This document shows positions 9,656-63,890 of a stretch of 64,000 nucleotides of DNA, piece after piece. The DNA lies in assembly GCF_021869535.1 (NCBI RefSeq), contig NW_026262734.1, positions 102,858,001 to 102,922,000 on the forward strand, read 5' to 3'. Origin of the DNA: Mytilus californianus. Taxonomy: Eukaryota. The stretch's first letter is position 1. Each line of letters starts with the position of its first letter. The translations under genes were made by a program, and so were the position numbers. The notes under the pieces are model-generated. The model was not told the DNA's origin, made no database searches, and saw only the letters and a list, made by a program, of their open reading frames with translations.

Positions 9656-10590
9656 TTTTATACCCCACGCAACGAATGTTTTTGACCCGTCAGTCCGTCA
9701 GTCCTGTTTCTTGTCATTGCAACTCCTCTCAAACCACACAACAGAATTTCACGAAACCTTTTTAGATAATAAGGACATACTATTTAGTTGTGCATATCAA
9801 CAGGAAATTACGATTCAATTCTTTTTCTAGGAGTTACGCCCCTTTGAACTTATTTACTTTAATGTACTACTGCAACAGTTTGTCATCGCAACTCCTCTCA
9901 AACTACACAACAGAATTTCATGAAACCTTTTCAGATAATAAGGACGTACTACGTAGATGTGCATATCGACAGGAAATTACGATTCAATTTTTTTTCCAGG
10001 AGTTACGCCCCTTTGAACTTATTTGCCCAATATACTACTGCAACTTTTTGTCATCGCAACTCCTCTCAAACCACACAACAGAATTTCATGAAACCTTTTC
10101 AGATAATAAGGACATACTACGTAGATGTGCATATCGACAGGAAATTACGATTCAATATTTTTTCCAGGAGTTACGCCCCTTTGAACTTATTTGCCCAATA
10201 TACTTCTGCAACCTTTTGTCATCGCAACTTCTCTCAAACCACACAACAGAATTTCATGAAACCTTTTCAGATAATAAGGACATACTACGTAGATGTGCAT
10301 ATTGACAGGAAATTACGATTCAATTTTTTTTCCAGGAGTTACGCCCCTTTGAACTTATTTGCCCAATATACTACTGCAACCTTTTGTCATCGCAACTCCA
10401 TTCAAACCACACAACAGAATTTCATGAAACTGTGTAGATAATAAGGACATACTATGTAGATGTGTATATTGACAGGAAATTATGATTAAATTTTTTTTTC
10501 TGATACAATTTTTTTCTTACACTTATTTTATTTCTCCAATGACAATGTGGGGACATGGGGTATGTGAGCGCGCTCACTAAGGTTCTTTAA
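9656..10590 (+). mobile_element. HINE-like element with internal 168-bp tandem array (about 4.7 units, 9712-10495)
   Basis: TGTCATCGCA-type motif at 9712, 9881, 10049, 10217 and 10385. Terminal hairpin GTGAGCGCGCTCAC. Confidence 0.85.
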
Positions 10591-14304: not shown

Positions 14305-16994
14305 CTGGACTTCATATCTTGTTTGCAGAGGCTTATGTTACAAAGATTCTGTCTGTCATATGTCCATTGTCCTCGACCTCATTTTCATGGTTCAATAACT
14401 GCTTGAAAAAAATATATAGTTCTTTTGTCATGTGAATTTCTCACTTATGACATGTATGAGTTATAGGATATTATAACTATATTTGGTATATGGGTTCCTT
14501 GCAACATCTACATGTCTGTTAGAAGGGTTCACCTGACTTCTTCTTCATTTTTTGATCAGTGACAAGGTCCATTTCTCAAATCCTATAAGCAGTAGGTCAA
14601 CTGTAAATGTATATCAGTCTGGCAAGTCAGTCTGGCAGGTTTCATCTGATCTTGGGTATGACCTCATTTCATTTATCAATGTTAAGTTTTTGTATTTTTG
14701 CTGATTTTCAAGTACTACAAGCTTAAATAATAGGTCAACTATATTTGGTGTATAAAAAAATCGTTTGGTGTAGATGTCTGTCTGATAGGATTTATCCGAC
14801 CTTCACCTCATGGTCAAAGATCTGTAAAGTGTTAAGATTTTGTGATACTTTTAGTAATTTTACCTTTATCTTAAAGAATTTCAACATAAAATAAATGGTC
14901 AGCATGTGCACTCTTAAGTCTTGTTGAGGTACTGGTTACCTATATAGCTATGAGTTGTACGCTTAACATGCTTTGACAATTTTGTAAATACTGGTTCAAC
15001 CTACAGCTTGTATTTAATAGAGGCTCTTCCAAGTTACGGCTATGGTAGTTTGATCAAAATTCCTTCATTGTTTGATTAATCTATTGATACTGTTTCTGCA
15101 CATTGATATATGAGTACACACACAACTTTGTTTTAAGATTTCATAAATGGAAAGAAAAAAGGAAAGGCTTACATTAGTTTGACAGCAACCTTACAACAAA
15201 AAGTACAATAAACATGGACATGACAGCAGTTTTTATACAACCGCCAAAAATCACATCATCGTCCGAATTTAAAAAAAAAAATTTCTTCAAATATTATTTG
15301 GGGAGGGGTGTCAATTCGCAACAGCATAGTGTACTGCACAAAAGCAAAAAAATGAATATAAATTCAAATCATATAACCAATTCTAGTTCTTTGACTACAT
15401 TTATTCTGTGTCAGAAACCTATTATTTGTCAAATATTTAATAACAATCCAAATTCAGACCTGTATCAAGTGCGAATATTGTGTCCATTTTTGCCCCAACT
15501 GTTCAGGGTTGGACCTCTGCGGTCCTATCCAGCTGCACTCGGCAAAGCAATTTATTTTAACATGCTAAAACTCACAATATGTCATAGGCATATACTTTGT
15601 AGGCGGTTTGGGACCTCTTAAGTGTATTAGACTATTAATTATTATAACATTACTTCATGGAAGTTAAATTTATATTATTTATGAATATTTTATTTCAGTT
15701 ACCATTCACAGTGAACATGGTGAAGAATAACCAATACCATGAATACAGGACATAGAAGACTACCTCACAAATATGGGAATTTTACAAAAAATACAACATT
15801 TAAATTTACAAAGAAGACATTTATTTTGACATTCATGGACTTTGAAAGTAAAGAAATTAGAATGTGAATAAAAATCCTTGGAAATAAAATTTTGAACTTT
15901 GAAGAAGATTGAAGATTATGTTTGTTCTAAGAAAGTTTTAAGAAAACAGATACATTCAAAACTGTAAAAAGGAAACAATACAATATTCACAATTACTCTT
16001 GAGATCAATTACTCTTGATATATAATTAAAAGATCATATAAAAGTAAAGAAATTTGGTTGAATTGCCAATGAGAAAAATATCCACCAGAGTTCAAATGAT
16101 GTGATAGTGAGCAATTATAGGTCACCATATGTCCTCCAACAATGAAAAAAACCCAACTATATAGTGTGCTATGAAAAGGTTTGGATATGACAAATAGAGA
16201 AAACTAAGAGCCTTATTTTAACAAGTTAATATATGAAAGCAAAATATGAACCAAAGACAAGCACTGAAATACTTATGATTATTGTTGATTTACTCTTGAA
16301 TATTCAAGTAGAATGTTTAAAAAGATTTTAAATCAGAGTTATCATCAATATTCAACTTGTTAAACAACAAGTCACTGTATGACAGAAAATTCTATGCCAA
16401 AAACCTTGAATGTATTGCATCAGAAACAAATTTTAGATAGAACACTAGGAGACTATATAAGGAAATGCAGATAAAAAGTATCATCACCTTAAAATAAAGT
16501 ATAGCATTTTGTCATTGACAGTTCCATCAAAAGTTTCAGCAATATAACTGTTACATAAAAATCAAACCATAAAGGTATTTTTTTTCAAAATATCTCTATA
16601 TAATAATATGCATAATATTAATAGACGTTATACGTCTGTGGTACAAAAAATCCGTATTACGGACGTGGTACTAAACATCCGTATTACGGACGTAGCATTA
16701 TAAATCCGTATTACGGACGTTTAACGGATGTTTTACGGTTTGATACGGACGTATTATGGATGGGAAGCAACGGACGTTTTACGTCCGTGGTACTATTCGT
16801 CCGTAGGTTTTCCGTATAATACGGACGTATTACGGATTTTTTACGGACGTAATACGTCCGTAGCTATTTTACCTGTGTACTATGCAACTATTTTAGTTCA
16901 TAAAACATTGCGCAGTCATAAAAAAAAGTAATTTTCGGCCATATTTAAAAAATACGAAACAGACACAAAAAGATAGGATAATATGCAGGAAGTA

Positions 16995-17967
16995 AGTCAT
17001 TTCGTACCTTGACCATTTCGTACCTCTGCCATTTCGTACCTAACATTTACAATTTCGTACCCACGATAAAATCCATTTCGTACCCTATGGGACAAATGAA
17101 TCTACCATTTCGTACCTCATAGACTAAATACATGTTTACTATTTCGTATCATATATTTGTAAAAGTTCTCATGATTTTAATTTTTTTTTAATACAAAATA
17201 AATAAAATTATGCATCCAGCCGTAGAAATTTTATAAAGGCCGATGGTTGGTATGATTAAGCAGCACTTGGAAACTTTGATAGTTTTAATTACAACTTGTT
17301 TGTTTGCAGGATTTGTTCTTAATTAATGTTTCAACTATAAAAAATATGACGTTAATTAACCAACAAAGAAATAAGTATCTGCAACTGTTTTTATAGTTAT
17401 TAACAGTTGTTTTTGTCAGGAAATGTGCAGTGAAAAGTGACACAAGCTGATTTTTACTCAAACAGGAAGCCATGGATAAAAGTGTTTGCATAAGAATGTG
17501 CACCTTATATGACCAATCAAAGAACTTGCTATGGCTTTTTCAATTTGAGAAATTACAGACAACAGAAGAGTTACGAAATGGTATTCATACAAACCTTCCA
17601 TGAAGTACGAAATGGTATGCATACAAATCTTCCATAAGTTACGAAATGGCATACATATAAATCTTCCATAAGATACGAAATGGCGCACATCAATGAAACA
17701 GTGTTTACCAAGAAATGAAAAACATATAAATCTTTCATGAAGTACGAAATGGCATACATATAAATCTTCCATGAGGTACGAAATGGTATACATACAAATC
17801 TTCCATGAGGTACGAAATGGTATACATAAAAATCTTCCATGAGGTACGAAATGGTATACATGTTAATATTCCATAAGGTACGAAATGGTCAAGGTACGAA
17901 ATGGTCAGGGTGTTTTTTGCCAGGGTACGAAATGGGGGGTACGAAATAGTTAGTGTACGAAATGACT
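16995..17967. mobile_element. Foldback-type MITE with subterminal CATTTCGTACC repeats
   Basis: TIR AGTCATTTCGTAC. The motif is inverted in the right arm, which also has an approximately 34-bp tandem repeat (17565-17885). No clear TSD. Confidence 0.8.
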
Positions 17968-18289
17968 AATAAAACAAGTTCAACCCACCAGGAGATTCAA
18001 AATTATTTTTGATGTTTCTGTTGTGGTTTTGGTTGGATAATGAGTTATGTATAATCCTTTGTAATCCAAATAATTATAAAATAGCCTTTCAATACCGTCA
18101 TTGTCATGATAATTGTTTGGACTGATATTGTGAAAATAATCGCATGAAGTTCAAGATAACATGTTCGTTACATAAGTGCATTACTGTTTGTGATGTCTTG
18201 TGCTGTCTGTCGTTAATGGAAGATGTTCTTTGTTGTAGTGCGGTTTGCATGTTGTGTCGACTGTTATGTTTTTTGTTTGTGCGTTTTTC

Positions 18290-18600
18290 TGTGATGAGTG
18301 TTCTTGCGTGTGTTTGTGCTGTATTTCTGTCACGTAGTGTTGTCATTTTAGCGATATGTTTTAACATTGCCGTATATGCGGGAGGTTTGGCTAGCCATAA
18401 ATCCAGGTTCAACCCACCGTTGTTTTCTTAAAATATCCTGTACTAAGTCAGGAATATGGCAGTTGTTATCAAATAGTTCGTTTCTATGTATGTTGGCGTT
18501 TGTTTTTGTTGCACTACAGTGTTCCTCTTATAGTTGAATTTGTTTTCTCTCTATCGATTTATGACTTTTGAACAGCGGTATACTACTGTTGCATTTATTT
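18290..18600 (+). repeat. Dispersed SINE-like repeat
   Basis: Core AAATCCAGGTTCAACCCACC...TGTACTAAGTCAGGAATATGGCAGTTGTTATC plus the GAACAGCGGTATACTACTGTTGC tail. Confidence 0.75.
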
Positions 18601-18924
18601 AATTATAGTTGTTGACAAATTGTAACGTAAAAAGCTATAAAGGAGAAATATAACAAAATCATGGAACTCGTATGCCGTAATTCTAGAAATTCATAAGCAA
18701 TTACAGTTGTTAAACACATGTAATTTCTTATGAATTTCTAGATTTGACACTTATAGACCATGTTGACCTTCATAAATTTTATGTGAAGTGGATACATTTT
18801 TATGGATAATTGTAAGATTATTGCATAACAAACATAAAATAAATATCGAATAGTATACTTAACAGCTTTGGATTTAAGTATATTCCATAAACAAATTTTA
18901 AAAGTAGACAAATAGACAACATCT

Positions 18925-19860
18925 GTTGAAAAAGTAAAATAACAAAAATACCGAACTCCGAGGAAAATTCAAAACGAAAAGACAATAATCGAATGGCAAA
19001 ATCAAAAGCTCAAACACATCAAACGACGTTTCCTGACTTGGTGCAGTCATTTTCTGATGTAGAAATTTGTGGATTGAACCTGGTTTTATAGCTAGCTAAA
19101 CCTCTCACTTGTAAGACAGTCGCATTTTGAAGTGACGCCAATGGCTTCGCAAAGATTGTCCAACGTTAGCAACTCTTACTGCTAAAAAATCTATAAATGT
19201 AACTTTAGGAACAAAACATAAAATGTCATAATTAGACTTTAAACTTTATAGCTTTAAACATTAATAATACTAAAATAAGCACTGTTTAATAATAAAACCA
19301 TACAATATGCTGAACTTAATAACTATGACCTTCTTGCATGTCAAGCTCGATCTATCCTTTAGGCGTGTTTCGGTACTTATGCTTCCCGCCAATGTGTTGT
19401 TGTGATGCGGTCATTTTGTGTATTCCTGTCTTATATTTTTGCTTAATAGGTGTTTTGTCTATATGCCATTTTGTTTTTCTTTGTTGACACATTTGTTTGT
19501 TTTAATAGTGATTAAGATTATAACACAATGTTGACTGCTGTACCCCTATTTTTGACATTCTAACCTATTATGTCTATTTCGTCTTTATCAAGACAAATAA
19601 AAATGTCTGCTTGTTTGGTTCACTGATGTTATCAATATAATGGAATTTTATGCGACTGTCACACAAGTGAGAGGTTTAGCTAGCTATAAAACCAGTTTTA
19701 ATCCATCATTTGCTACATAGGGAAACGCCTGTACCAAGTCAGGAATATGACAGTTGTTTTCGATTCTTTTGATGTGTTTGAGCTTTTGATATTGCCAATT
19801 GATATGGGACTTTCCGATATGAATGTTTCTTGAGTTCGATTTTTTGTTATTTTACTTTCT
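18925..19860. repeat. Two oppositely oriented copies of a second SINE-like family (18925-19125 minus, 19640-19860 plus)
   Basis: GAGAGGTTTAGCTAGCTATAAAACCAG and its reverse complement. Shared core CAAGTCAGGAATATGACAGTTG. Confidence 0.75.
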
Positions 19861-19869
19861 ACAAATGAA

Positions 19870-21785
19870 CAGAGCAAATATTTTCTTCTGTCAATACCAG
19901 ATAATATTGACGATCTCAGTTATCGGACGGGCACAAATAAAAGGTTTCCTATTTTTTTTTCTAGTTAACCAGTTGATTCTGAATTAGCAAAGTAGATAGT
20001 ATACGAATGTCGAATTGTCAGCATCGCTGGACACTACGACAATTGGTCAGGCCTGTTCCAAAAATGTCAATAGATCTTCGTGTGTCAAGTTCTTATATCT
20101 AACTTATATCTAAAAGCTTCGTACTCATATTTTTCGAGCCATATTTATCATTCGCTCCCATGAGTCACTAATGCTAGAGTACTCTTGTGTAGCTATACTT
20201 ACCTTTGCTCCCGTGAGCCGTTAAGATAAGAGGACTTTAGTGTAGCTATACTAATTATTTTTTGCTCCCTTCGTCACTTATGTGTGAGGATTCTGGTGTA
20301 GCTATTCTCATGATCCCATGGGCCCCTTATGTGACAGCACTCTAGTGTAGCTGTACGTATTATTCGCTTTAATGACCCTTGATATGAGAGAACTAGCTAT
20401 ATTTATAATCATTCGCTCCCCTGAGTCATTAATGTGAGATGTGTAGCTATACTCGTCATCCCATGGGACCTAATATGAGAGCACTCTGGTGTAGCTATAC
20501 GTATCATTCGCTCCCATGAGCACTAATGTAAGAGGACTCTGGTGTATCTTTGTTATCATTCGTTCCCTTGGACCACTCACTATCTGGTCATGCCATCAGC
20601 CCCTTATGTGAGGGGACTCAGGTGTAGCTTTACTTATCATTCGCTCCGATGAGTCACTAATATGAGAAGACTCTGTGTAGCTATACATAGCATTCGCTCC
20701 CATGAGCAACTAATCTGAGAGGACTCAGGTGTAGCTATTCCTATCATTCGCCCCAATGATACACTAGTGTGATAAGCTCTGGTGTAGCTATACTTATCGT
20801 TCGCTCCCTTGGGCCACTTATGTGAGAGGTCTTTGGTGAAGCTATCCTTATCATTCGCTCCAAAGAGACACTTTTGTGATAAGCTCAAGTGTAGCCATAC
20901 TTATCATTCGCTCCCTTGAGCCGCTGATTTGAGAGGAATCTTGTGTAGCTAAACTTATCATTCGCTCTCGTTAGCCATTAAGGTGACAGGACTATGATGA
21001 ATCTATACTTATCATTAGCTCCCATGATCCACTAATAGGAGAGGACTCTGGTGTATTGAATTCCGTATTTTACCATACTTGTTAAGGAATGCTCCCACAT
21101 CGCCATTTCCGACATTTAAAGAATTGATCTGCAGGGCATAGGTACAATCAATAAAGTTCGAACCGCGCATTACCTCGAAGTGCTTAAATTTCGCGATGAG
21201 GACCTCATCTCATGAAACTGCCGCTTTATGAACTGCTCTCGATGAAACGCTTGTTAATAAGACCGCCAATAGTTTCGAATTTACAACGCTTTATTTTGTG
21301 CGTCAGGTGACTATTGTACAAGGTCCATAATCATCTTTACCAACTAAAACTAAATGGTGAACATAGTGATAATCTTTCGTCAGGTCAACCTGCCATTTTC
21401 TGTTCATTAAAGGCACTAAACGCACCAGTAATTTATCGACATTTGACAAACCTTAAAAGTGTACACGACACCAGTCATTTTGCAGCTTGAAATCCACTAT
21501 CCGGGAGACAAAATGGTACCTACAGTGAAATGTCTTTGCTAATGTTGTGCGTCGTTGTGACGGTCAATCAGAGAAGCACTTTGATTTTTACCGGGAATAA
21601 GGATGGGTGCATTTTCTTTTGATGCACTTCCAGCGATTCGAAGTCTTCCTCTTCTCCCAAAATTCCATTTCTATCAAAGAAGGGACATCAGGATGGGACG
21701 GAACTGTTTAGTTTTCCGACACTCAGTTTCTTTATCGGAATACCCCTTTTGAACTTCCTTGTCTATGACATTCTCAGTTTTTCGA
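19870..21785 (-). mobile_element. Decayed Bel/Pao LTR retrotransposon pol fragment (integrase region), interrupted by a 54-bp array
   Basis: Minus-strand translation with stops and shifts: GRLRIAG..APILIPGKNQSASLIDRHND.QH.QRHFTVG, EQKMAG*PDERL, VGKDDYGP, SRAVH, RGSNFI, FNTPESSPISGSWELMI, WERMINMARKI, KNLTHEDLLTFL. This follows the Bel/Pao HHCC, rve and post-core order. Confidence 0.85.
20146..21054 (-). repeat. 54-bp minisatellite (about 17 units) derived from the integrase E-motif
   Basis: Unit is roughly TATCATTCGCTCCCATGAGTCACTAATGTGAGAGGACTCTGGTGTAGCTATACT, with spacing 53-54 bp in the regular part. The minus frame reads SIATPESSHISDSWERMI. Confidence 0.9.
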
Positions 21786-21849
21786 TGAGCTTCAATAACT
21801 AAGTAAAAAGATGAAATAACTCTCTACGTCAAAAAAAAAACAAAAAAAC

Positions 21850-23009
21850 AAAACAACTATAGGTCATCGTATAGTCTTCAACAATGAGCAAAAATGTACG
21901 ACAAAGTAAGCTGTTATAGGTCAAAAACTGATAAATGTGAAACTATTCAAACGAGAAAACTTACGGCCTGATTTATTTACAAAACAATAAACGAAATACA
22001 AATCTTATATAAACAACAAATCAAAACCACTAAATTACAGGTTTCTGACTTGGGATAGGCACAAAGAAAATGTGGCGAGGTCAAACATGTTTGCTGGCGC
22101 CAAACTCTCCCCCTTATCTGGGACAGTGGTGTAACAGTACAACATATGAACAAAGCATCAACATCAGTTGAGCAGGACTTAACTCATCGCATCGATACAA
22201 GGCACAGACAGTTGGGAAAAACTATTTGTACATATCTGATACGGATTCGGCGAAATAGCAAAATCTAAATGTCAAAACTAACAACACTTCTTTGACCTAT
22301 GTCTCCGACCTCAATATCCCTCAAGTGGAATAAGAACCTTTATTAAAATGATACTAAGTCTAAATGATTTATGACGAAATATCACTTTTACTCAACTACA
22401 AAATTGGGATTGCTTTGTTCGAAACTCAGTGCGAAAAGATGACAAAACCGTTGAAAGAAAAATGTCGATATCTTTAACGTTTAAGTAGCAGTAGTGATAA
22501 CAAGGACAAGATAACAAACGTTTATAGAGAAAATGTCTTGTTTCAGAGGTGTCAATATCAGAAACCATATTTTTGGACAACCTGCCTATACACCAAAGTG
22601 TAAACAAAAGTGACAGAAGCAGACAAAATAATTCAACAAGAATCTTTTTGGAAATGTAAGTGTCTTCAACAATGAGCAAAAATATACGACAAAGTAAGCT
22701 GTTATAGGTCAAAAACTGATAAATGTGAAACTATTCAAACGAGAAAACTTACGGCCTGATTTATTTACAAAACAATAAACGAAATACAAATCTTATATAA
22801 ACAACAAATCCAAGGCACTAAATTACAGGTTTCTGACTTGGGATAGGCACAAAGAAAATGTGGCGAGGTCAAACATGTTTGCTGGCGCCAAACTCTCCCC
22901 CTTATCTGGGACAGTGGTGTAACAGTACAACATATGAACAAAGCATCAACATCAGTTGAGCAGGACTTAACTCATCGCATCGATACAATGCACAGACAGT
23001 TGGGAAAAC
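21850..23009. repeat. SINE-like repeat with a near-identical 349-bp local copy (21872-22220 and 22661-23009)
   Basis: Only about 5 visible differences between the copies. Same family as about 7255-7790, 16050-16265, 42975-43205 and 56340-56625. Confidence 0.85.
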
Positions 23010-23415
23010 CCCTAAATTCACATTAGTAATGGTTAAGAAGATTCATTCTGGTTTGAAAAATTAATTCAAGTGTCTAACACAATTTTATTTTACACTGATT
23101 TCATGCAGGTTTATGTACTATTTAATGTAATAACTAGATAATGAGCGAATACAACTTCTTTAAAATGCCATTTAAAATGCATTGCTGTTACGACATGTCC
23201 AGTGAACAATTAAAAAATCTTTTTTAATATGTGTTGCGGTTACTCAGGAGTGACGCTTACAATCAAACGTCCAAATTAGGAGCATAACCTTAAGGTGCGG
23301 CAATGACTTCAATTTTTCTGACAGCAAACAGTGAATGTCAGTGTTAATCATATGACAATATTTCTATTGCATCTGAATTAAAGTGGTCCACTTACATATC
23401 ACATATGAAAATTAC

Positions 23416-23882
23416 AAGATTTGCTAATGTTTGTTTCAATAGCATCCTCGATAATTGTAATCAACTGTTATTACATTGGTAGCATTGAATTACATTGATT
23501 TCCCAGTCAAATAAAAACCGATAATTTCACATGTGAAATAAACGTGGTTATTTCACTCTCTGACGTCATACAACAATAGGCGTTGTCAAGACGTCGATAA
23601 CGTCGGATCAAAACAAATTGTGAATGCGTAGAAAAAAGATATAGTTCCTTACATTTTCTACATTAATTTCATTAAAAAAAGCCATTTGCCAATGTAATAA
23701 AAAGAATAACTAATCAAAGAATTCAAATATCGAAAAATATTCAACTCGTGACCGAACAACACTGATAATTAACTCATGCGCTACGCGCATTCGTGAATTA
23801 ATGTGTTGTTCGGTCACTCGTTGAATATTTTTCTCTATTTGAATTCTTCGATTAGTTATTCTATAATTATTGGGATATATTG
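23416..23882 (-). pseudogene. Decayed LRR pseudo-exon interrupted by a 399-bp insertion
   Basis: Removing the insertion leaves 68 nt, ag|C AAT ATA TCC CAA TAA ... TTG ATT ACA ATT ATC GAG GAT GCT...|gtaatt. Shares its defects with 27851-27918. Confidence 0.45.
23468..23871. mobile_element. 399-bp insertion ending in a long hairpin (about 23703-23862)
   Basis: Absent from paralog B near 27900. TTATT at both junctions. Inverted arms of about 58 bp around ATGCGCTACGCGCAT. Confidence 0.75.
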
Positions 23883-24559
23883 CTGATATCTGTTAAATTA
23901 CTAAGGAGTATCGAAAAAATGGTTTTCTAGGAACAAAAAGTAAAAACAAAAATGTTTGGTTTAGTGGAGTGGGTTTAATAAACCTATTAGTTTCATGTAC
24001 ATACTATTTTATCAACATTCTTGAAAACCGAACTGTAGCACAAATAAAATACACATAAAAAAAGAAATACAGAAGAAATTAGATAATTTGTTATATATGT
24101 TACAGCTGTTAATAAATGTGTAAGAGCCAAATTGAGGGTTTACGTTTTTAGATATATGGTAATTTGAATTGAATGCTTTTAGTAAAATCGTTCCTGAAGA
24201 GTACACAAGGCATGTAAAATATATTGAAGTTAAAAGAGACCTGTAGCACATTAATGAAAAAATGGTGAACATAATTCATTTCTTCAATCCAATTATTGGA
24301 ACAACTCCTTACAGCTGTCTGACTTATGGTCAAAATAAACTAAAGTTACCTAAGGATAGACATGATATAACAAATTAGAAACACCCTACCCCAATAAAAG
24401 ACTGTAGGAGGAGAATTCGAAAATAACAGTAGCCTTACAATACCGAATGCAATATCTCTTATGTAACAAAAGTTAATGTCTTTAAAATAAAACGAACAAA
24501 CGAAAAACAAAACTTATATAGTCCAATATGATCATTTTGATTGACAAATATGACATGTA

Positions 24560-25445
24560 TAAAGTCCTCTAAGAAACCTCTTTCTAAATTATCAACATCA
24601 GATTGATCAGCAATCGAAGCCGTGCTTCAAAGTTATTGTGAAACTACCTTTTATAGAGGCGGTGTGAACCAGATGTTAATATTAAAAAAAACAAAGATCT
24701 GTTTCAAAAAGATTGACTTTTCTACCCTTTATACGTGTTTTTCCCATTCCAAACAAAAAGATAAATTAAAAGAATTTGTCCCACTTTGTTTTAGAAACGA
24801 AATGGCCAACGTAGATACAAGTATCTTGTTTAAGGGAGTAATACATTGTACTTTACAAAACACTGTAATACTGACATTATCAAGATGCTATATATCTTGA
24901 TTGAGAACATATTTGTTAAGTTTGAAGGACGTGTTGTTTCAACAAACAATCTGCATTCCCATGAGAACAAACAGTTCTCCTCTTCTTGCTGATTTACTCA
25001 TTCATATGAGGCTGACTTCATACAGGAGCGTCTTGGGAAGCATGAAAAGAAGCTAGCGTTATCCATTAACTTCATTTTCAACTAAATAGATGATGTCATA
25101 CTATTAAACAATCAAACTATGGTGACTATGTTCAACGTACCTAGCCCATCGAATTTGAAAAAAAAGGATTAACACACACAGTTAAGTATGCCTTATATTT
25201 TGTCTTGATTTTGTCTGGAATATATGTTTCACAGATGCCGACTTATATGTTCCGATTATCGTAACCAGAATCACGTCGTCTTTTCCCGAATTTGACCCAC
25301 CGAATAAGACTTATAATCGGGTTTGTATATTGTACTTATATGAGCAACATGACGTTGCTTTGTTGTGTTTTGTAAACTGGTGTTGTTAGTTTATTTTTGC
25401 CTTAAGAGTTGGAATGTCCATGTGGTATCTTTCGCCCTACTTTTA
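24560..25445 (+). mobile_element. Degenerate Naiad-type Penelope-like RT fragment and 3' end
   Basis: LQSYCETTFYRGGVNQMLILKK...DFSTLYT and downstream LIENIFVKFEG-like segments, collinear with 62590-63515. Confidence 0.7.
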
Positions 25446-25649
25446 TTTTACATGAAAATATACGGACATTGATGTTCGTTCTGCTATAAAAATTCTTAAT
25501 TGGTCCTAAACAACGTCAATTGTAGTTTATTTATCTGCTAAAATGAGGATCAAAACGTTTAAGGAGACTACATATCATTAACTTGTTGTTTAAAAAAATT
25601 AAATACACTTGTATTATTGTTCCGTGAATACTTTGTTAGAAATACTTAC

Positions 25650-25721
25650 AGTTCTCGTAAATTCAAGTTGTTAGCGAAAATATTCTGCGGTAAACTATCT
25701 ATATTGTTGCCTCCAAGATCA
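25650..25721 (-). CDS. LRR exon 7 of the minus-strand LRR gene: DLGGNNIDSLPQNIFANNLNLREL
   Basis: 72 nt, ctttcttttattatag|T...CT|gtaagt, phase 2/2, no stop. Confidence 0.9.
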
Positions 25722-27850
25722 CTATAATAAAAGAAAGTTATAACAAGTTTTAGATATCTGTGCTCACTTGTACATTAGAATGTACAATTTAGATAATGCA
25801 AAAGTACAAATAAATATTGTTATTGCAAAACTAATACACAAACCCTAGCATCAAAGGAGTTCAACGAATAATCAGACAACACTTCAAACCAGTACAATGG
25901 CACAGACAACAAATAATTCTGTTTTTGATTACGAGTTGCAAACTTTGTTTTATATTTCAATTTTAGGATATGCTACTCCTTATATGTCATTGAACGTAAA
26001 CGTAAATAAATCAGATAAAAGCTAGGAATGATATGGTCAACCACGAGTCCTTATTTTATAATGATGCATCTCCTTTGACGAAGCATATCACTGTATGAGG
26101 TAAGTGTAGTATTATTGAATGATTTTTCAAATGAGAATTTTTTAATATCATTCAAATTTAAATTTACGGTATTTAGTAGCAACCGTTTTAATAAATGTCA
26201 AAATTTGTGTTATTTTTACAATACTGACTTTTAATAGAACCTAAATAATCAAATATAGGAGGTATAAAAGACAAAGGTGGTATGAAATATTACTACAGTT
26301 TTTAGATTTAGACCTTGAAATGACTTTTAACCTAATATATTGAATCATGCCGATTTTCTGTTCTGTTTTATTATCTTAAAGTACAAAAGAAGATAGATAA
26401 CGCCTGAAAGGTTACCAATTTTACTGCAAAACCAATGTCTTCTTAATAATAACCAAGGCAAAGTTATAAAAAATTTAAAGTGGCCATCTGAATTTAATCC
26501 GGATTGAAAATTCTAACATTTTTTTACCTATAAATTAAATCCTTAAATTTGATAGTGCTAAACACAACTACCAAATAGCCTGGCATTCTGTAAGATCAAT
26601 ATATAATTGAGATAGCTGCAAAGTTTAATGAAAATCCAATTTATTTGAAAAAGTGATATACATGATTAAAGGTGACTATCGTAATTTAATCAGAACGGGA
26701 AATTCTACCTTTAATTTGAAAGCAATGAACCAGACTACAAAATAACCCATAAAATATAATAATACACAAGCAGTTTGAGAAAACTATTTGTACATAGTTG
26801 ATACGGATTTGGCGAAATAGCGAAAAGTAAATGTCAAAACTAACAACACTTTTTGGACCTATGCTTTTGATCTCAATATCCCTCAAATGATGTACAACCT
26901 TTTTTGAAAATCATACTTAGTCTGAATTGCTGACCTTTCAGAAGTTCCGAAGAAATATCACTTTAACTCAACTACAAAAACGGGATTGCTTTGTTCGAAA
27001 CTACGTGCGAAATTCAAAAGATGTGACAAAACCGTTAAAAAAATGTCGATATTTTTTACGTTTAAGTAGTAGTAGTGATAACAAGGACAAGATAACAAAC
27101 TGTTATAGAGAAATATCAGTAACCATATCTTTTTAACAACTTGCCAATACATTAGAGAGAAAAATAAAATTGACTGAACATGCTGAAGCAGACAAAATAA
27201 TTCAACATCAATCTTTCAGGAAATTTAAGTGTCTTTACACCCTGAAATTCACATTAAAAAAATAGTTCATTCTGGTTTTGAAAAAAATATTCGTGTCTAA
27301 CAAAATTTTATCTTACACTGATTTCATGTAGGTTTATGTACTAATTAATGTATAATAAGATAATATGCGATTTCAACTTCTTTTGAAATGTTTCCCAGCT
27401 TTAATTAATAAGTGGAAGAAGGACTGACAAAAATCTGAGTTGTTCTATAAGAATGAGCAGATCTTGCAACACACGTTTTTATAAACGGACAATTGTAGAA
27501 AGATTGTTATAAATCATGTCAGTACCGAAGTACTGACTACTGAGTTGATGATACCCTCGGGGACTAGTCCACCACCAGAGGTATCGACCCAGTGCTGTAA
27601 AAAACGAAAACAACACGTTATTTATTTAATGCGTCCGAAGCGCTTTTCCGGTAAAATATCATTTGAATGCATGCAGTGACGACATGTTCAATCAACAATT
27701 AAAAAATCTTTTTTAATATATGTTGCGGTTACTCAGGAGTGACAATAACAATCCGGCTCTGACAGAAAATCAATGAATGCTAATCAAATGACAGTATTTC
27801 TATTGCATCTAAGTTAAAGTGGTTCACTTACATCTCATATATGAAAGTAC

Positions 27851-27918
27851 AACATTTGCAAATATTTGTTTTAATTGGATCCTCGATAATTGTAATCAAC
27901 CTTTATTGGGATAGATGG
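27851..27918 (-). pseudogene. Decayed LRR pseudo-exon (HLSQ*RLITIIEDP..., shifted to NKYLQML)
   Basis: 68 nt, 4 short of 72, with a premature stop and a weak donor (gtactt). Paralog of 23416-23882. Confidence 0.45.
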
Positions 27919-29429
27919 CTGGTATTCCAATTACAAAGGAGTAGTAAAAACCAGGTTTTTTGAGGAACAAAATGTTCTAAAATAAATGTTTGGTTTAGTG
28001 TTGTGGGATTAAAAGACCATATTAATTCTTCGATTTCATGTACGTAATATCTTATCAAAATTCTGGAAAAATGAACTACAGCACAAATAAGACACACAAA
28101 ATAAATTTGCAGAAGAAATAATATAATTGAAGATATCTGTAACAGCTTTTATTGAATTTGTAAGAGCCCAATTGTGGGTTTACGACTTTAAATATATAAT
28201 AATTTAAATTGAATGCTTTTGGTAAAATCGTTATTGTTAAGACATAACTCTTTACAGCTGACTGACATGTGGTCAAAATAAACTAAAATTACATAAGGAT
28301 ATAACAAATAATATGCCCCTACCCCCAAAAAAGATTGTTGCATGAGGAGAATTAAAAAAAGTAACAAAGCAAAACTGCCATAATTAATATAAGTATTTAA
28401 CTGTATTGAAAATCTAGATTGCACAGTCTTGTCTTATTTTAGTCCGTTTACAAACAATATGATGAAGAAGTAGTTTATTCATTAAAAAAATGTCATTGCA
28501 ACATCATCACCAAGTCATGATTTATTTTTGTTTTTCAAAAATGGCGTACTGTTTTATGAATTCAATAAAATTAACAACCTTAATTTGAAAAATATTTAAC
28601 CTAAAACAATTACTTTGAAAAACAATCAGCTCCTATACATGTACGTGGCTTATAGGTTGCATTTCTGTAAATATCAACAATGCAATTTCCCATAGGAACT
28701 CCTTTCACGGATAAAACTGTACCACTTTTAATAAGAAGTTTTGAAAAAAAATATATCCTAGAATGGAAAGTTCATATGCACTACTATTTTTTTCAAATGT
28801 CAAAATATAGGGCTGTGCGGCATATTTTCAACGTTTATATGCCCCGAACTTCTAAGAGTTTAAACTTACATTAAATTTCTATAGTACCCCAACCTTGACT
28901 TTAGGATTTCCACAGACTTCAACTTGATCACTATGAATATGTATATTTACTGGTAACATTCCCAAGTTATGTCTCTATGAGATAAAATATAGAAATCATA
29001 TCCGGGAACCAGTGCGTAAACAAAATTAATTGTCTATGAATATTATATATCTCTCCAAAAGAGGCGTGGTTTGAAAAACAGCTGTATTTACAAAGTGAAA
29101 CCTTATTAATAGGTATGTTAGGCGCGAATTTCATTTGCATAAAACTGCTTAGTAGATGAAAAAAACACTTGAGAGATGTACCTCCTTCGAAAAGATTGTC
29201 TGGGTTAACGTCAGATTGTTTTCAAATGTTTTGCTATAAGTTCTTAAAATGCAGGAATTATTATGAGCAGAAGCAACTTCGGAACATGAAGGTGATATTG
29301 TTTGATACAATGCATATGTAAATTCCATTTGAAAAGGGAAAACTACAATGTCCTAACAATACCTTATCCAATATGTAATAAAAGTTAATGTCTCTAAAAT
29401 AAAATAAACAAACTAATACAATCCAGTAT

Positions 29430-30590
29430 GATTATTTTTGGTGACATATATGAACTGCTCCAAGAAACCTCTTTCAAAATTATTCACATCAAGTTTATCA
29501 TTAAAGCTGGGCTTCAACATTATTTTGAAACTACCTAATCTAGACATGCTAGAGGCGGCGTGAACCACATGTGGATGTTTAAATTTTTTTTGAGTATTTA
29601 CCATCTAAGACTCTTTCAATCTGCAATTGTATCAAAACACTTGACTGTTTTACCCTTTACACATGTTTTACCTATTCCAAACAAAAAGATAAATTGAAAG
29701 AATGGGTTCTGCTTTGTGTCATAAAAACAAGTTTGGCCAACGTAGATACAAGTATCTTGTCTAGGGGAGGAATACATCTTACTTTGTATAAAAGTCACTC
29801 TGATTCAAAACAACAAAGCCGCTGATATTGACATTATCAAGATCCTTTATTTCTTGATTGACAACATATTTGCTACGTTTTAAAGATGTCATCTTCAACA
29901 AACAATCGGCATTCCTTCGAAAACCAACTGTTCTCCTCATCTTGATAATTTACTCCTTAATTGATATGAGACTGACTTCATACAGGAGCGTCTTGGGAAG
30001 AACGACAAGAAGCAAGCATTATCCTTAAACTCACTTGCCGCTATATAGATAATGTATTATTATCAAACAAATTAAACTATGGTTACTTTCTTCAACGCAT
30101 TTATCACATTGAACTCGAAAAAAGGATAAACACACACAGAGGTAATTCTGTTTCATATTTTCAATGAAGGCCGGTTGAGATCAAATATTTATAATAAAAA
30201 TAATGATTTCAGCTTTCCAATTGTGAACGTTCCATTTTCTGTAGCAACATACCAGAATCATTTGCAAATGAAATATATAACTTCCAAGATGTTATATGAA
30301 GATGAAATAATCCCTTCGCAACTTTAAAGGACGCCATCACGAGTTTGTGTATTCTTATGGAATATATGTTTCATAGTTGCCGACTTTTATGTTCCGATTA
30401 TCGTAACAAAAATCAATTTGTCTTTTCCCCGAATGTGGTCCATCGAATTAGACTTATCACCGGGATTGTACTTATATGAGAAAAATGACGTTGCTTTGTT
30501 GGGGTTTTTGATACTGGCGTTGTGAGTTTATTTTCGACTTTTGAGTTTGAATGTCCATTTAGTATCTTTCGCCCCACTTTTATTATACAT
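29430..30590 (+). mobile_element. Degenerate Naiad-type Penelope-like RT fragment and 3' end (paralog of 24560-25445)
   Basis: FLIDNIFATF, QTIGIP and GRHHE-like segments, followed by the family 3' tail. Confidence 0.7.
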
Positions 30591-31064
30591 GAGGACATGA
30601 GGACACTGATGTTCGTTCTGCAATCAAAAGACTAAAATGTTCATAAACAACGTCAATTTTCGTTCTTTATCTGCAACAATGAGGATCAAAACGTTGGGGA
30701 GGAACTACAGATAAATTTATTTAATGATTAATTCAAAAAATTTTAAACCTTGTTAGAAGGAATGTCCTTTCTAGCCTACGCGCGAAAACACACAGCATCC
30801 AACATTTTTGGGAAAAGCACGAGAAGCTTTCTAATGTAAAGTAAAAGCTAAATGTTCAAGGATCATCAATACAAATAAGTGTCATAGATGATCGTCTTTA
30901 TTTTGTAATGCCAAAAGAACTGCATTTGTTTCAACCATTCACTCAAATGTTTGGGAAAATGAAACATTTAGAAGACAAAATAGAAAAATAATACACTAAC
31001 TTTGGTTTTAAAAAGTAAATGCACATGCATTATTGTGCTCGATTACTTTGTTAGAAATACTTAC

Positions 31065-31136
31065 AGTTTTTGTAAATTCAAGTTGTTAGCGAAAATATTC
31101 CGCGGTAAACTATCTATATTGTTCAAATCGAGATGA
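31065..31136 (-). CDS. LRR exon 6: HLDLNNIDSLPRNIFANNLNLQKL
   Basis: 72 nt, tttttatattttgtag|T...CT|gtaagt, phase 2/2, no stop. Confidence 0.9.
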
Positions 31137-31491
31137 CTACAAAATATAAAAATTATAAAAGTTAAAAAGATATCTAGGCTCACTTGTACATGAAAATGTA
31201 CAAAAAAAATAACGCAAAAGTACAAATGAAAATTGTTATTGCATAACTAATACACAAACCCTAGCACAGAAAACAAATAATTCTGTTTTTGCTCACGAAA
31301 TGCCAATTTTTTTTTATATTTCAAATTTAGGATGTGCTACTCCTTTTAAGACATTGAACGTAAACGTAAATAAATCCAACCAAAAAAAGCTACGAATTAT
31401 ATAGTCACACATGAGACTTTATTTCATTATAATGCACCTCCTTTATTATATCTTGACAAAATGAAGCACTATATGAGGTAAAGGTAGTTTA

Positions 31492-32010
31492 GTAAAATAA
31501 GGATTTTTTCGTGCAACGTTTTCGGCCTTTTTATTTCACGTGTTTTCGTGTTTTGACGTTTTATTTTTCGTTTTCTCGTGTTTGGTTCAATGTGCGTGCT
31601 TCGTGTTTCCCCTTATTTATTTTCCGTGTTTCGTGTCGGTACTCTTAATGTCTTGTTCTTGTCCCGCAATTATTAGAAAAGTCAACAGGGACTAATTCAA
31701 AGTCAGCCCGGATATTGTATATGTATGGCATGTAATAAAATCCATCACATTACAATGAATAATATTTTTTTTTTCAAATCAGATACAACTAGCGGACGCT
31801 AAAAGGTGACCACAAGGTCTTCATGTCCGTTAACAATGATTGCATGATCTCCAAGAACGGCTGGGTAATAACTTCTATTACCTTTTCCCTTATTATTTAC
31901 GATTTTATTTCTGGTGCTTCGTGTTAGCCGATCTTTATTTTTCGTGCAACGTTTTTGCGATTTTTATTTCACGTGTTTCCGTGTTTAGACCCCCCTTTAC
32001 CACCCTCTGA
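31492..32010. mobile_element. MITE-like insertion with GTGTTT(T/C)CGTG repeats
   Basis: Absent from paralog A near 26110. Ends CCCCCCTTTACCACCCTC. Confidence 0.55.
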
Positions 32011-39885: not shown

Positions 39886-41955
39886 AACGAATTATTCATT
39901 GAATTCAAGGATATTCTGCTACCATTCCTAGAGGAAATGTTCAATAGGATATTAGCGTCAGGACTATTTTTCGAAAGCTTGGGCACTCGCAGTGTTAATT
40001 CCTGTTTTTAAAAAAGATGACTCGTCCGATCCAACGAACTATCGTGGAATCAGTTTGGTCAGTAATTTAGCGAAAGTATTTAATCTATTATGAATTCAAG
40101 GCTAATAAAATGGTCTGAGAACAATGATATTATCCACGATGCGCAATTTGGATTTTGCCCTGGTAACAGCACTGTTGATGCAATTTATTGTTTGTTGACA
40201 CTTGTCAAGAAGGCACTTTTCAAGAAAAAAAAAACGTTTATATTGCTGCTTCGTTGACTACAAACAGGCATTTGACTCCGTATCCAGACTTTACTTATGG
40301 TTGAAACTGTGAAGAGTTGGTATAACAGGAAAATTGCTGTCTGTTTTAAAATCAATGTAATCTACAGTAAAAGTATGTGTAAAAATTGATGGTTTTTATT
40401 CTGAGCAGTTTACAAGTCAGGTTGGTCTTATGCAAGGGGAAGTTCTTTCCCCTATACTTTTTTCGTTATATGTCAATGACTTTGAAATGGAATTCCTACG
40501 TAATAGTAATATACCATATGAAGTACAAGATTTATCATTATTTTTTAATATGCACGCTGATGACATCATTTTATTTTCTGATTCAGTTACTGGCTTGCAA
40601 GATATGTTAGACACACTTTTATTATATACTTGTAAATGGGGTTTGACTGAATATATTTCCAAAACAAAAATTATGGTATTTAGAAACGGAGGTTTTGTGA
40701 AAGACGAAGAAATCTGGTATTATGATGGCAATGCTATTGACATAGTGGATGAAATTTGTTACCTTGATGTACTGTTAAATTCTAACGGTAAATTTGTTAA
40801 AGCTCAAAAGCTGAGCAAAGTAGAAAAGCTGTATTTGGTTTAAAGTCGAAGGTTTCGTCATTGTATTTGAATGTTTTTACATATTTGAATTTGTTTGATA
40901 CTTATACTAGGAGTATTCTATGTTAGGGGTGTGATATATGGGGCTTCCATAAACCTCCAAATATTGAAAAAATACAACTTAATTTTTGCAAAAATATATT
41001 AGGTGTCAAACAGTGTACAACAAATGTTATGGTTTATTTTAAATTGGGTAGATATACTTTGATATATTTTAGAATGTACAAAATAGTGACGTACTGGTTA
41101 AAATTATTATCCATAAGCAACTGTATTCTTAAAAACTGTTAAAGGGAACAACTGTATAATTTCTGTAACATAAGAAGCAGTTTGTTTATCAACTACAACA
41201 AGTATTATTTACCTTAGGTTTAAATGAGATTTGGTATAACCAAGACAATTTGATATTTGATACAAATTTATTATTGATTGTAAAAACAAGGATATATGAT
41301 CAAGCAAAACAGACTTTAAATGCTCAAATGAACATTTCATCTTAATGTTATTTATATAAATATATTGTCAATAATGTATGTTTGCAGAATTATCTCACTA
41401 AACATATGAATTTTAGAGTGTATTTAACTCGGCTAAGATTGTCTTCACGTAACTTGTTTGTTGAAGTAGGCCGTTATCATGGAGTAAGTAGATTAGACAG
41501 AAAGTGTACTCTTTGTTCTTTGAATACCACTGAAGATGAATTTCATTTTGTTTTACAATGTGAATGCTATAGAGATTTAAGGATACAGTTTATTAAACCT
41601 TATTATTATAGGCGTCCATCGTCGTTCAAATTAGTTCAACTTCTCAGCATTGAAAATGTCAAAGATTTGCGTAATTTGTGTAAATTATTATTTAATAAAC
41701 TTAATCATAGAACTGAACTCTTAGTGCACAATACTTGTTATTATACTTCATGTCAAAATGCCAGATTTTGATTGGTTAATACGAGGGAGACAATTTACTC
41801 TATCCCATGGCAAATACTCTATTACCCTTCGCGGAGACGCTTGATGAAGTGAGTGTGCGCTTTATTAAATACAGATGATTGTTATGTACATAGTTTATTA
41901 CTTTGAATTTAAAATTTAGTACACAGTAATAACAGAACATTCAGTATAATAAATT

Positions 41956-62589: not shown

Positions 62590-63515
62590 TTTTGAAAAAT
62601 TCCTTAAAATCATTTATATCTTATTGCAGTACATCAAACTTGTACACCACTTTTGGATATTGGACCCTTTTTACTGTGAAACTGTTTTCTCGCGTAGTGG
62701 TATTGTAACCATATGTGGATTCTTAAAAACTAATTTTAAATCTCGATCTTTCTCTAAAACTAGTTCTATCAAACATTTTGGTTTCTCAACCCTGTATACC
62801 AACATTCCCCATGTGAAATTGAAATATAGTCTAAAAGAAATAATCCACTATGCTTTTCAACATGCAAATGTTGGCATACGCTATAAAAGTATTACTTTTT
62901 GATACCATACGGCATACTTTGTTAATAGTGAACAAAAAAGTAAAACATGCTACACAGAGGAACAAGTGATCAGTATGCTGGAGTTCCTTATTGACAACAT
63001 ATTTGTTGAATTTTGAGGTAGACTTTTTCAACAAATTGTTTGCATTCTTATTGGAATGAACTATGCGCCTCTCCTTGTTCAGTCTTTTTTTTATAGTTCC
63101 TTCAGACGCTTGTCAAAAACAAGAAGATCAAAGAAGCCAGATCTTTTAATTTAACATCCAGACATATTGATGATGTTCTTTCCATTAACAATCAAAACTT
63201 TTCTGATTGGGTTCCATTAATATATCCCCCAACACTAGAAATTAAAGAAACAACATACATGACTTCCTCTGCCTCGTTTTTAGACTTATACCTCGAATTT
63301 GACATAAGCAGTCATTTCAGTACCAGAATCTATGACAAACGAGACGATTTTTATTTTGAAATTATCAATTTCTCAAACCTTAGTAGCAATGTACTAACTT
63401 CACCTGCATATTGGATATACATTTCCAAACTCATTCGGTATTCAAGAGCTTGCAGCTGTAACTTAGACTTCGTAAAACGTCACCAGTGTCTAAGCAGAAA
63501 GCTGATGAACCAAAG
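62590..63515 (+). mobile_element. Decayed Naiad-type Penelope-like reverse transcriptase
   Basis: YCETVFSRSG..FSTLYTNIPH..LEFLIDNIFVEF..DIDDVLSINN..FLDL..IYDKRDDF..YISKLIRYSRAC. Stops and frameshifts present. Confidence 0.85.
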
Positions 63516-63890
63516 AATGTCAAAAAAGAGGGGCGAAAGATACCAGAGGGACAGTCAAACTCATACATCGATAATAAACTGACAACGCCATGGCTAAAAA
63601 AAAACAAAACAAACAGACAAATAATAGTGAACAAGACACAACATAGAAAAACTAGAGACTAAGCAACACGAACCCCACCTAAAACTGGGGGTGATCTCAG
63701 GTTCTCCGGAAGGGTAAGCAGATCCTGTTCCACATGTGGCACCCGTTGTGTTGCTCATGTTATTACAAACCCGGTAAATAGTCTAGTTCGGTAGGTCACA
63801 TTCGTAAAAAAGGGAACGGGATTGTAGTTACGACATAAGGAACATATCCGATATCATCTGTGAAACGGATATTCCATAACGATCAACCAA
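63516..63890 (-). mobile_element. Naiad-type 3' end in opposite orientation
   Basis: Reverse complement of the 39520-39885 type sequence. Confidence 0.8.

What the first reader, a model, noticed from the sequence alone, without database searches (positions are those of the whole stretch)
19870..21785. A minisatellite born from the catalytic-glutamate motif of a Bel/Pao integrase
Seen: reading the minus strand, integrase runs to FNTPESSPISGSWELMISI. The same 18 codons then repeat about 17 times (e.g. IATPESSQISCSWERMLC), and integrase resumes as WERMINMARKI...KNLTHEDLLTFL. Established: FNPP.(A/S)SHMGG.WERMI is the Bel/Pao segment carrying the E of DDE. Inference: the array arose in place by slippage or rolling duplication of coding DNA, so progenitor and both flanks are preserved. 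The units are diverged and carry indels, so no protein is expected today.
Basis: partly seen in the sequence, partly recalled or inferred. Interest (0 to 1): 0.7.

Follow-up and report, generated by a model that had tools for sequence, protein, structure and literature searches.

The report
Fossil tandem array from retrotransposon integrase
An 18-codon piece of a dead Bel/Pao retrotransposon integrase, holding its catalytic glutamate, was copied head-to-tail 17 times long ago; the array then froze and was carried to three other loci by duplication of the surrounding host DNA, so it is a clear but ordinary case of transposon-derived tandem DNA.

Summary
On the minus strand, 21060-20143 holds 17 head-to-tail units of about 54 bp. 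They sit inside a degenerate, 5'-truncated Bel/Pao integrase fragment (21796-19900).

An intact relative elsewhere in the genome has this segment once. Collapsing the array gives contiguous integrase. The unit spans the loop after strand beta5 and the start of helix alpha4, which carries the invariant glutamate of the W-E-R motif.

The array was not born at this locus. The same truncated fragment and array lie in three paralogous blocks: C154 (44 kb upstream), C13 and C24. These blocks share host sequence for 15 kb or more, and the C154 block also shares an LRR-type exon.

Units cluster by position across loci, not by locus. Orthologous units differ as much as the flanks (K2P about 0.16). Units within one array differ more (about 0.27). 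So the array was essentially complete before the segmental duplications.

It is not hypervariable. Contigs from two other individuals and from a second species (about 94% identical) show the same unit number. No RNA reads cover it.

Tandem arrays derived from retrotransposon gag or pol segments are already described. This is a new member of a known kind, of low to moderate interest.

The parts
21061..21796 (-). Degenerate Bel/Pao integrase fragment upstream of the array. It corresponds to residues about 1455-1715 of a 1916-aa polyprotein of an intact relative. It has stops and frameshifts, and the second catalytic Asp is replaced. The 5' truncation point is at about 21796.
   Evidence: Translated alignment, E 7e-36, 39-45% identity. 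DNA identity 68% to L009. No further pol homology anywhere in the window.
20143..21060 (-). Tandem array of 17 units of about 54 bp (18 codons), derived from the integrase segment T-P-x-S-S-H-x-G-G-x-W-E-R-M-I-G-I-A.
   Evidence: The units align to the single-copy segment of L009.
21007..21060 (-). First unit, W00. It keeps the original 5' context (F-N-T-P) and a diagnostic E-L instead of E-R, shared with the C13 and C154 paralogues.
   Evidence: 90% identical to the first units of C13 and C154b. These form a clade with support 97/88.
20552..20631 (-). Long degenerate unit W08 (80 bp). Its positional counterpart in C13 is also long (108 bp).
20143..20196 (-). Last unit, W16, which reads on into the rest of the integrase (W-E-R-M-I-N-M-A-R-K-I).
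19900..20142 (-). Remainder of the integrase: the rest of helix alpha4 through the C-terminal DUF5641 region. About 110 residues are deleted between 20002 and 19956. The last matched residues are R-P-I-T-E-I-V.
   Evidence: relative's residues 764-831, then 941-959. Pfam DUF5641 in the intact relative.
19352..19862 (.). Very abundant interspersed repeat inserted between the end of pol and the LTR remnant. It is not part of the Bel/Pao element.
   Evidence: 5396 first-look candidates in the genome. Read depth of 10^5 to 10^6. The insertion is shared with the C154 paralogue.
18763..19344 (-). Remnants of the 3' LTR of the old Bel/Pao copy.
   Evidence: About 71% identity to positions about 309-688 of the 867-bp LTR of the intact relative.
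21831..21857 (+). A-rich run just beyond the 5' truncation point, followed from about 21856 by another very abundant repeat.
   Evidence: depth jumps to 10^4 to 10^6 from 21856.

Best explanation
An old Bel/Pao LTR retrotransposon copy inserted next to, or in an intron of, an LRR-type host gene and lost everything upstream of its integrase.

Within the dead integrase, an exact 54-bp (18-codon) segment was duplicated in tandem. The segment covers the loop after strand beta5 and the first turns of helix alpha4, including the catalytic glutamate. The duplication junction has only 1 bp of microhomology. I infer that the first step was replication slippage or end-joining repair.

I also infer that later rounds of unequal exchange or slippage, including multi-unit steps, enlarged it to about 14-17 units.

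The array then decayed by point mutations and small indels, and it stopped changing in unit number. Afterwards the whole host block was duplicated at least three times, giving C154 (44 kb away), C13 and C24. Each copy took the array with it.

Later changes are few:
- one unit more or less between the window and C13;
- an internal loss of about 10 units in the C154 paralogue;
- a 5' truncation in C24.

Today it is neutral, untranscribed fossil DNA.
For: Anatomy and contiguity.

Identity as Bel/Pao:
- The closest intact relative has Pfam Peptidase_A17 (Pao) at E 1e-43 and DUF5641 at 2.5e-23. It matches rve at 4.9e-6, which is below the curated cut-off.
- It has 867-bp LTRs and a single 1916-aa open frame.

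Catalytic glutamate:
- D19, D86 and E136 are invariant in 31 homologues.
- 30 of 30 homologues keep W-E-R.
- In the AlphaFold model (pLDDT 78.9), D19 lies on beta1, D86 right after beta4 and E136 on the helix after beta5.
- The best structural matches are the PFV, RSV, HIV-1 and HTLV-2 integrase cores, E down to 3e-7.

Single origin before the duplications:
- Array and flanks recur at three loci.
- Homology to the C154 and C13 blocks extends over at least 14-15 kb of host sequence. The C24 block shares two host stretches (25575-26467 and 30738-31506) directly abutting its array. An NNIDSLP LRR exon was found in the C154 block only.
- The 5' truncation point is shared with C154b and C13, whose alignments run across it.
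- Units are collinear between loci.
- In the unit tree, units cluster by position with starred support for positions 0, 1, 2 and 15, and never by locus.
- K2P distances: flanks 0.157-0.172, orthologous units 0.157-0.165, non-orthologous units 0.27-0.29.

Stasis and silence: contigs of two conspecific runs and of a second species span the array with only small indels, and RNA depth is zero over 19931-21855.
Against: - The mechanism of the first duplication and of the expansion is inferred from the end product only.
- The host gene model was not built, so 'intron' versus 'downstream of the gene' is open.
- My downstream-flank alignments between paralogues gave much higher distances (0.25-0.51). 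This is probably poor delimitation on my part, but it means the equal-distance argument rests on the upstream flank and the units.
- One contig of run X7 shows a joint that skips 211 bp inside the array (20258 to 20470), with short sides of 35-40 bp. It could be a shorter allele rather than cross-mapping from a paralogue.
- RNA was sampled in one run at about 6% of its reads.
Confidence: 0.85

Rival explanations
1. The array-bearing element was itself mobile. The array arose in a Bel/Pao subfamily or a non-autonomous derivative, and the four copies are separate retrotransposition events.
For: Four copies lie on three contigs. Bel/Pao elements are abundant and some look recently active in this genome.
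Against: - The window, C154b and C13 copies share the same 5' truncation inside the integrase and the same non-element sequence upstream. C24 lacks the integrase part upstream of its array, so its truncation point cannot be read.
- Homology to the C154 and C13 blocks continues for 14-15 kb or more of host sequence on both sides. C24 shares two host stretches next to its array. A shared LRR exon was found in C154b only.
- A secondary repeat insertion is shared with C154b.
- No copy has a 5' LTR or gag-RT region.
Confidence: 0.05
2. One reading: the array was born at this very locus, and the arrays in the other loci arose independently from the same slippage-prone segment.
For: The integrase segment is present once in each ancestral fragment, so recurrent slippage is conceivable.
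Against: - Units pair by position across loci with high support.
- Diagnostic variants are shared: E-L in the first unit, the long eighth or ninth unit, and the truncated-unit clade.
- Orthologous units are as similar as the flanks, while neighbours within an array are more diverged.
Confidence: 0.03
3. The array has been co-opted by the host, for example as a regulatory element or as part of a transcript of the neighbouring LRR gene, and is kept for that reason.
For: Unit number is the same in two species at about 94% identity. The array is retained in three or four paralogues.
Against: - Divergence of the array between paralogues equals that of the dead flanks.
- One paralogue lost about 10 units and another is truncated.
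- RNA depth is zero.
- The units carry stops and frameshifts.
Confidence: 0.04
4. Assembly artefact: a mis-assembled or artificially expanded repeat.
For: Tandem repeats are prone to assembly errors.
Against: Independent contigs from other individuals and from another species reproduce the array with the same length. The units are 20-30% diverged, so the sequence is effectively unique.
Confidence: 0.01

Closest known systems
Tandem repeats and satellite DNAs derived from segments of LTR retrotransposons (review PMC12628747: satDNA can arise from LTR, gag or pol segments)
   Same: A subsegment of an LTR retrotransposon is tandemised. The source element is still recognisable next to the array.
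   Different: - Only 17 units at one ancestral locus.
- No satellite-type amplification or homogenisation.
- The four copies arise from duplication of host DNA.
Short tandem arrays inside Ty3/gypsy Ogre elements that seed plant satellites (PMC7004042)
   Same: Short arrays embedded in a retroelement at a fixed position relative to the protein domains.
   Different: - The Ogre arrays lie downstream of the coding region, travel with active elements and in some cases expand into long satellites.
- Here the unit is cut out of the integrase catalytic core of a dead, truncated copy and never expanded further.
[quoted passage not shown]
   Same: Repetitive DNA derived from integrase coding sequence.
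   Different: - A 702-bp unit found on nearly all chromosomes and derived from a Ty3/Gypsy element.
- Here a 54-bp unit from a Bel/Pao element, in a low-copy array.
Classical hypervariable minisatellites (own knowledge)
   Same: Unit length in the 10-100 bp range, head-to-tail arrangement, internal variant units.
   Different: No unit-number variation was seen among the three other genomes examined. The units are too diverged (about 25%) for ongoing unequal exchange.

Membership tests
Bel/Pao LTR retrotransposon (integrase region) | Pao-specific polyprotein domains (Pfam Peptidase_A17, DUF5641) in the family to which the fragment belongs | tested here: met
   The closest intact relative, L009, matches Peptidase_A17 at 1.1e-43 and DUF5641 at 2.5e-23. 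Homologues in the protein database carry the same domains.
Bel/Pao LTR retrotransposon (integrase region) | The window fragment aligns in order to the integrase of such an element | tested here: met
   Translated alignment to relative residues 500-831 and 941-959, E 7e-36. tblastn of the 1916-aa polyprotein gives hits only at 21796-20002.
Bel/Pao LTR retrotransposon (integrase region) | Integrase catalytic core with a D, D, E triad, the E lying in the repeated segment | tested here: met
   - D19, D86 and E136 are invariant in 31 homologues.
- The model has the RNase H-like order of strands and helices, with E136 on the helix after beta5.
- The top structural matches are retroviral integrase cores.
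- Residue-level superposition was not available, and sequence searches of the PDB were blank.
- In the window copy the second Asp is replaced.
Bel/Pao LTR retrotransposon (integrase region) | Two LTRs flanking gag-pol | tested here: not met
   Only 3' LTR remnants are present. There is no gag, protease or RT homology in the window. It is a 5'-truncated fragment, not an element.
Minisatellite (hypervariable tandem repeat) | Head-to-tail units of 10-100 bp | tested here: met
   17 units of 40-80 bp, mostly 53-54 bp.
Minisatellite (hypervariable tandem repeat) | Unit-number polymorphism among individuals | tested here: not met
   - Run X2 contigs have the same length as the window.
- Run X7 has a 16-bp deletion only.
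- A second species spans 20183-21284 with 13 gap letters.
- The sample is small, and one ambiguous joint in X7 is unresolved.
Transposon-derived satellite DNA | Amplification into long arrays or many loci with homogenisation of units | tested here: not met
   Only four loci in 1.65 Gb, all explained by duplication of host blocks. Units cluster by position, not by locus, so there is no concerted evolution.

The most novel reading that the evidence does not exclude
The frozen array has been retained because the host uses it, for instance as a cis-regulatory or chromatin element of the duplicated LRR-type genes. That would explain why its unit number is unchanged between two species.
Probability: 0.04. 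Interest if true: 0.5.

Novelty: new member of a known kind. Interest (0 to 1): 0.25.

Why it matters
It is a clean, fully traceable example of how a tandem array is born from coding DNA of a dead transposon. The source segment, both flanks, the novel junction (1-bp microhomology) and an intact single-copy relative are all available.

Three later duplications and a second species provide a relative clock. They show that the array expanded early and then froze.

Its practical use is modest. The position-specific unit variants act as a barcode for reconstructing the duplication history of the neighbouring LRR-type gene cluster. It does not reveal a new mechanism or function.

Tried and rejected
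- Single-sequence and profile searches of the integrase core against PDB sequences gave nothing relevant. I replaced them with a structure model and a fold search.
- The literature search for a paper describing the Bel/Pao D,D,E motif was unproductive. One search failed on syntax.
- The block at 16875-16990, conserved in the paralogues, was tested as a possible host exon. It has no open frame and is low-copy. At a fifth locus it sits next to LTR-like sequence. I do not count it as an exon.
- That fifth locus (C154:109.53 Mb) has LTR-like homology but no integrase and no array.
- Downstream-flank distances between paralogues were inconsistent, probably because I delimited the regions poorly. 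I did not use them.

Full report
**Setting.** The window is part of a 115-Mb contig of a 1.65-Gb animal genome with about 32% G+C. The best protein relatives of the element discussed here come mostly from bivalve and other molluscs. The host is therefore probably a mollusc, but that is an inference.

**Observation.**
- Tandem Repeats Finder reports a 54-bp period (8.6 copies, score 464) and a 107-bp dimer period (score 492) at 20593-21055. It also reports a 53-bp array at 20459-20567.
- Anchoring on the start of the unit gives 17 units between 21060 and 20143. Eleven are 53-54 bp, one is 80 bp, and five are 40-56 bp.
- A 26-mer across the novel unit-to-unit junction occurs eight times with up to three mismatches, only inside the array, against none in 100 shuffles.
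- Only three units (W00, W06, W16) still read W-E-(L/R)-M. Ten units have lengths that are not a multiple of three, and there are stops in all frames.

**What the flanks are.**
- A DNA search of the genome with the upstream flank found two nearly identical loci (L009, L010) at 67-68% identity.
- L009 belongs to an 8046-bp element with 867-bp LTRs and one 1916-aa open frame.
- Its product matches Pfam Peptidase_A17 ('Pao retrotransposon peptidase', 1.1e-43) and DUF5641 (2.5e-23). It matches rve more weakly (4.9e-6, below the curated cut-off).
- The window aligns to this polyprotein only from about residue 1455 to the end. About 110 residues are deleted between 20002 and 19956.
- An abundant unrelated repeat is inserted at 19862-19352. 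Remnants of the 3' LTR lie at 19344-18763.
- Nothing upstream of the integrase survives anywhere in the window.
- The intact relative has the repeated segment once. The alignment reaches it from the left in the first unit and leaves it to the right from the last unit, so collapsing the array restores contiguous integrase.

**Is it the catalytic glutamate?**
- Thirty diverse homologues all keep the W-E-R motif.
- In an alignment of 31 integrase cores, D19, D86 and E136 are invariant.
- Sequence searches of the PDB were blank.
- A structure model (pLDDT 78.9, pTM 0.78) has the strand and helix order of an RNase H-like integrase core. D19 lies on the first strand, D86 directly after the fourth strand, and E136 on the long helix after the fifth strand.
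- Its best matches in the PDB are the catalytic cores of PFV, RSV, HIV-1 and HTLV-2 integrases, E down to 3e-7.
- The unit (T125 to A142 of that alignment) therefore spans the loop after beta5 and the start of alpha4, with the glutamate.
- I could not obtain a residue-level superposition. The assignment rests on invariance plus topology.

**Not born here.**
- The array query finds three more loci: C154 (44 kb upstream of the window), C13 and C24.
- All share flanks with the window.
- With larger contexts, homology runs from about 16036 to 31508 of the window for the C154 block and from 16874 to 30770 for C13. In C24 the array abuts host sequence that matches 25575-26467 and 30738-31506.
- This shared sequence is not Bel/Pao. 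It contains LRR-type exons on the minus strand (N-N-I-D-S-L-P, at 31123 and 25708), one of which was found again in the C154 block.
- The 5' truncation point of the integrase is shared by the window, C154b and C13. The secondary repeat insertion is shared with C154b.
- These are segmental duplications of host DNA, not transposition events.

**Unit phylogeny.**
- The C13 array has 14 units, the C154 paralogue has 7, and C24 has 5.
- Best matches between the window and C13 are collinear: 0-0, 1-1, 2-2, 4-3, 5-4, 6-5, 8-7 (both abnormally long), 9-8 and 10-11.
- The C154 paralogue keeps units 0, 1, 2, one of the 3/5 type, then 15 and 16. That amounts to an internal loss of about ten units.
- In a maximum-likelihood tree of 40 units plus the single-copy segment, I left out the two long units and one 40-bp unit. 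No locus forms a clade: the tree needs 25 label changes, against a shuffled mean of 20.4.
- Positions 0, 1, 2 and 15, and a clade of truncated units, unite units from different loci with starred support.
- K2P distances are 0.157-0.172 for the upstream flank between paralogues, 0.157-0.165 for orthologous units, and 0.27-0.29 for non-orthologous units.
- So the units had already diverged from each other when the block was first duplicated, and there has been no homogenisation since.

**Present state.**
- Contigs of another individual (run X2) cover 19774-21245 with six differences and the same length.
- A second run (X7) is about 97% identical, with a 16-bp deletion.
- A run labelled as another species (X9) spans 20183-21284 with 63 differences and 13 gap letters. 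It has the same number of units at about 94% identity.
- That identity is far above the 78-85% between paralogues, so the X9 contig is the orthologue.
- An RNA run gives zero depth from 19931 to 21855, but only about 6% of it was read.
- One X7 contig with a 211-bp skip inside the array has short sides and may be cross-mapping from a paralogue. I leave it open.

**Mechanism.**
- Shown: the unit is an exact 54-bp excerpt, and the junction joins A-T-A-G-C-T to A-C-A-C-C with one base of microhomology.
- Shown: variant units, such as the truncated type at positions 10 and 13, recur non-adjacently, which indicates multi-unit duplication steps.
- Inferred: an initial slippage or end-joining duplication, then growth by unequal exchange or slippage, then loss of the homology needed for further change.

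**Comparison with the literature.**
- A recent review states that satellite DNA can arise from LTR, gag or pol segments of LTR retrotransposons (PMC12628747).
- A lamprey repeat derives from a Ty3/Gypsy integrase-coding region (PMC5381345).
- In Lathyrus, short arrays inside Ogre elements lie downstream of the coding region and seed satellites (PMC7004042).
- The present case is a small, frozen, low-copy member of this kind. Its distinguishing point is that the origin, the junction and the later history can all be read off.

**Verdict.** Novelty: a new member of a known kind. Interest: 0.25.

Noticed in passing
window 19352-19862: Very abundant interspersed repeat of about 510 bp, with 5396 first-look candidates in the genome. 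At C143:107.17 Mb three copies lie 880 bp apart, which suggests it also forms tandem arrays.
   Followed up: partly
window 9711-10498: Tandem repeat of 168 bp, 4.7 copies, 93% matches (score 1336). Long stop-free frames of 179-192 codons run through it on the + strand.
   Followed up: no
window 17572-17889: Tandem repeat of 34 bp, 9.3 copies, with overlapping stop-free frames on the minus strand.
   Followed up: no
genome-wide; L009/L045 (C1:9.26 Mb), L010/L050 (C143:55.0 Mb): Bel/Pao integrases are numerous: 150 scored matches of 827 candidates, many in open frames of 1900-2140 codons. One element has LTRs that are 99.9% identical. The superfamily therefore looks recently active in this genome.
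   Followed up: partly
window 22151-22666 versus 26767-27472; C13:14994000-15003000: The host block next to the array is itself tandemly duplicated in the window. In C13 the matching stretch is duplicated with a period of about 3989 bp.
   Followed up: partly
window 21690-21893: This stretch spans the integrase truncation point and is 85.8% identical to C13. The long alignment that follows it is about 71% identical. It could be chance or a constrained element.
   Followed up: no
window 40361-40840 (+) and 63097-63579 (+): Stop-free frames with reverse-transcriptase-like motifs, judged by eye from the translation. They are probably non-LTR retrotransposon remnants.
   Followed up: no
window 20258-20470, run X7: One contig joins 20258 to 20470 with 18 other letters between. 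The same contig also shows a 'goes back 301' joint. It is either a shorter allele or cross-mapping from a paralogous array.
   Followed up: no
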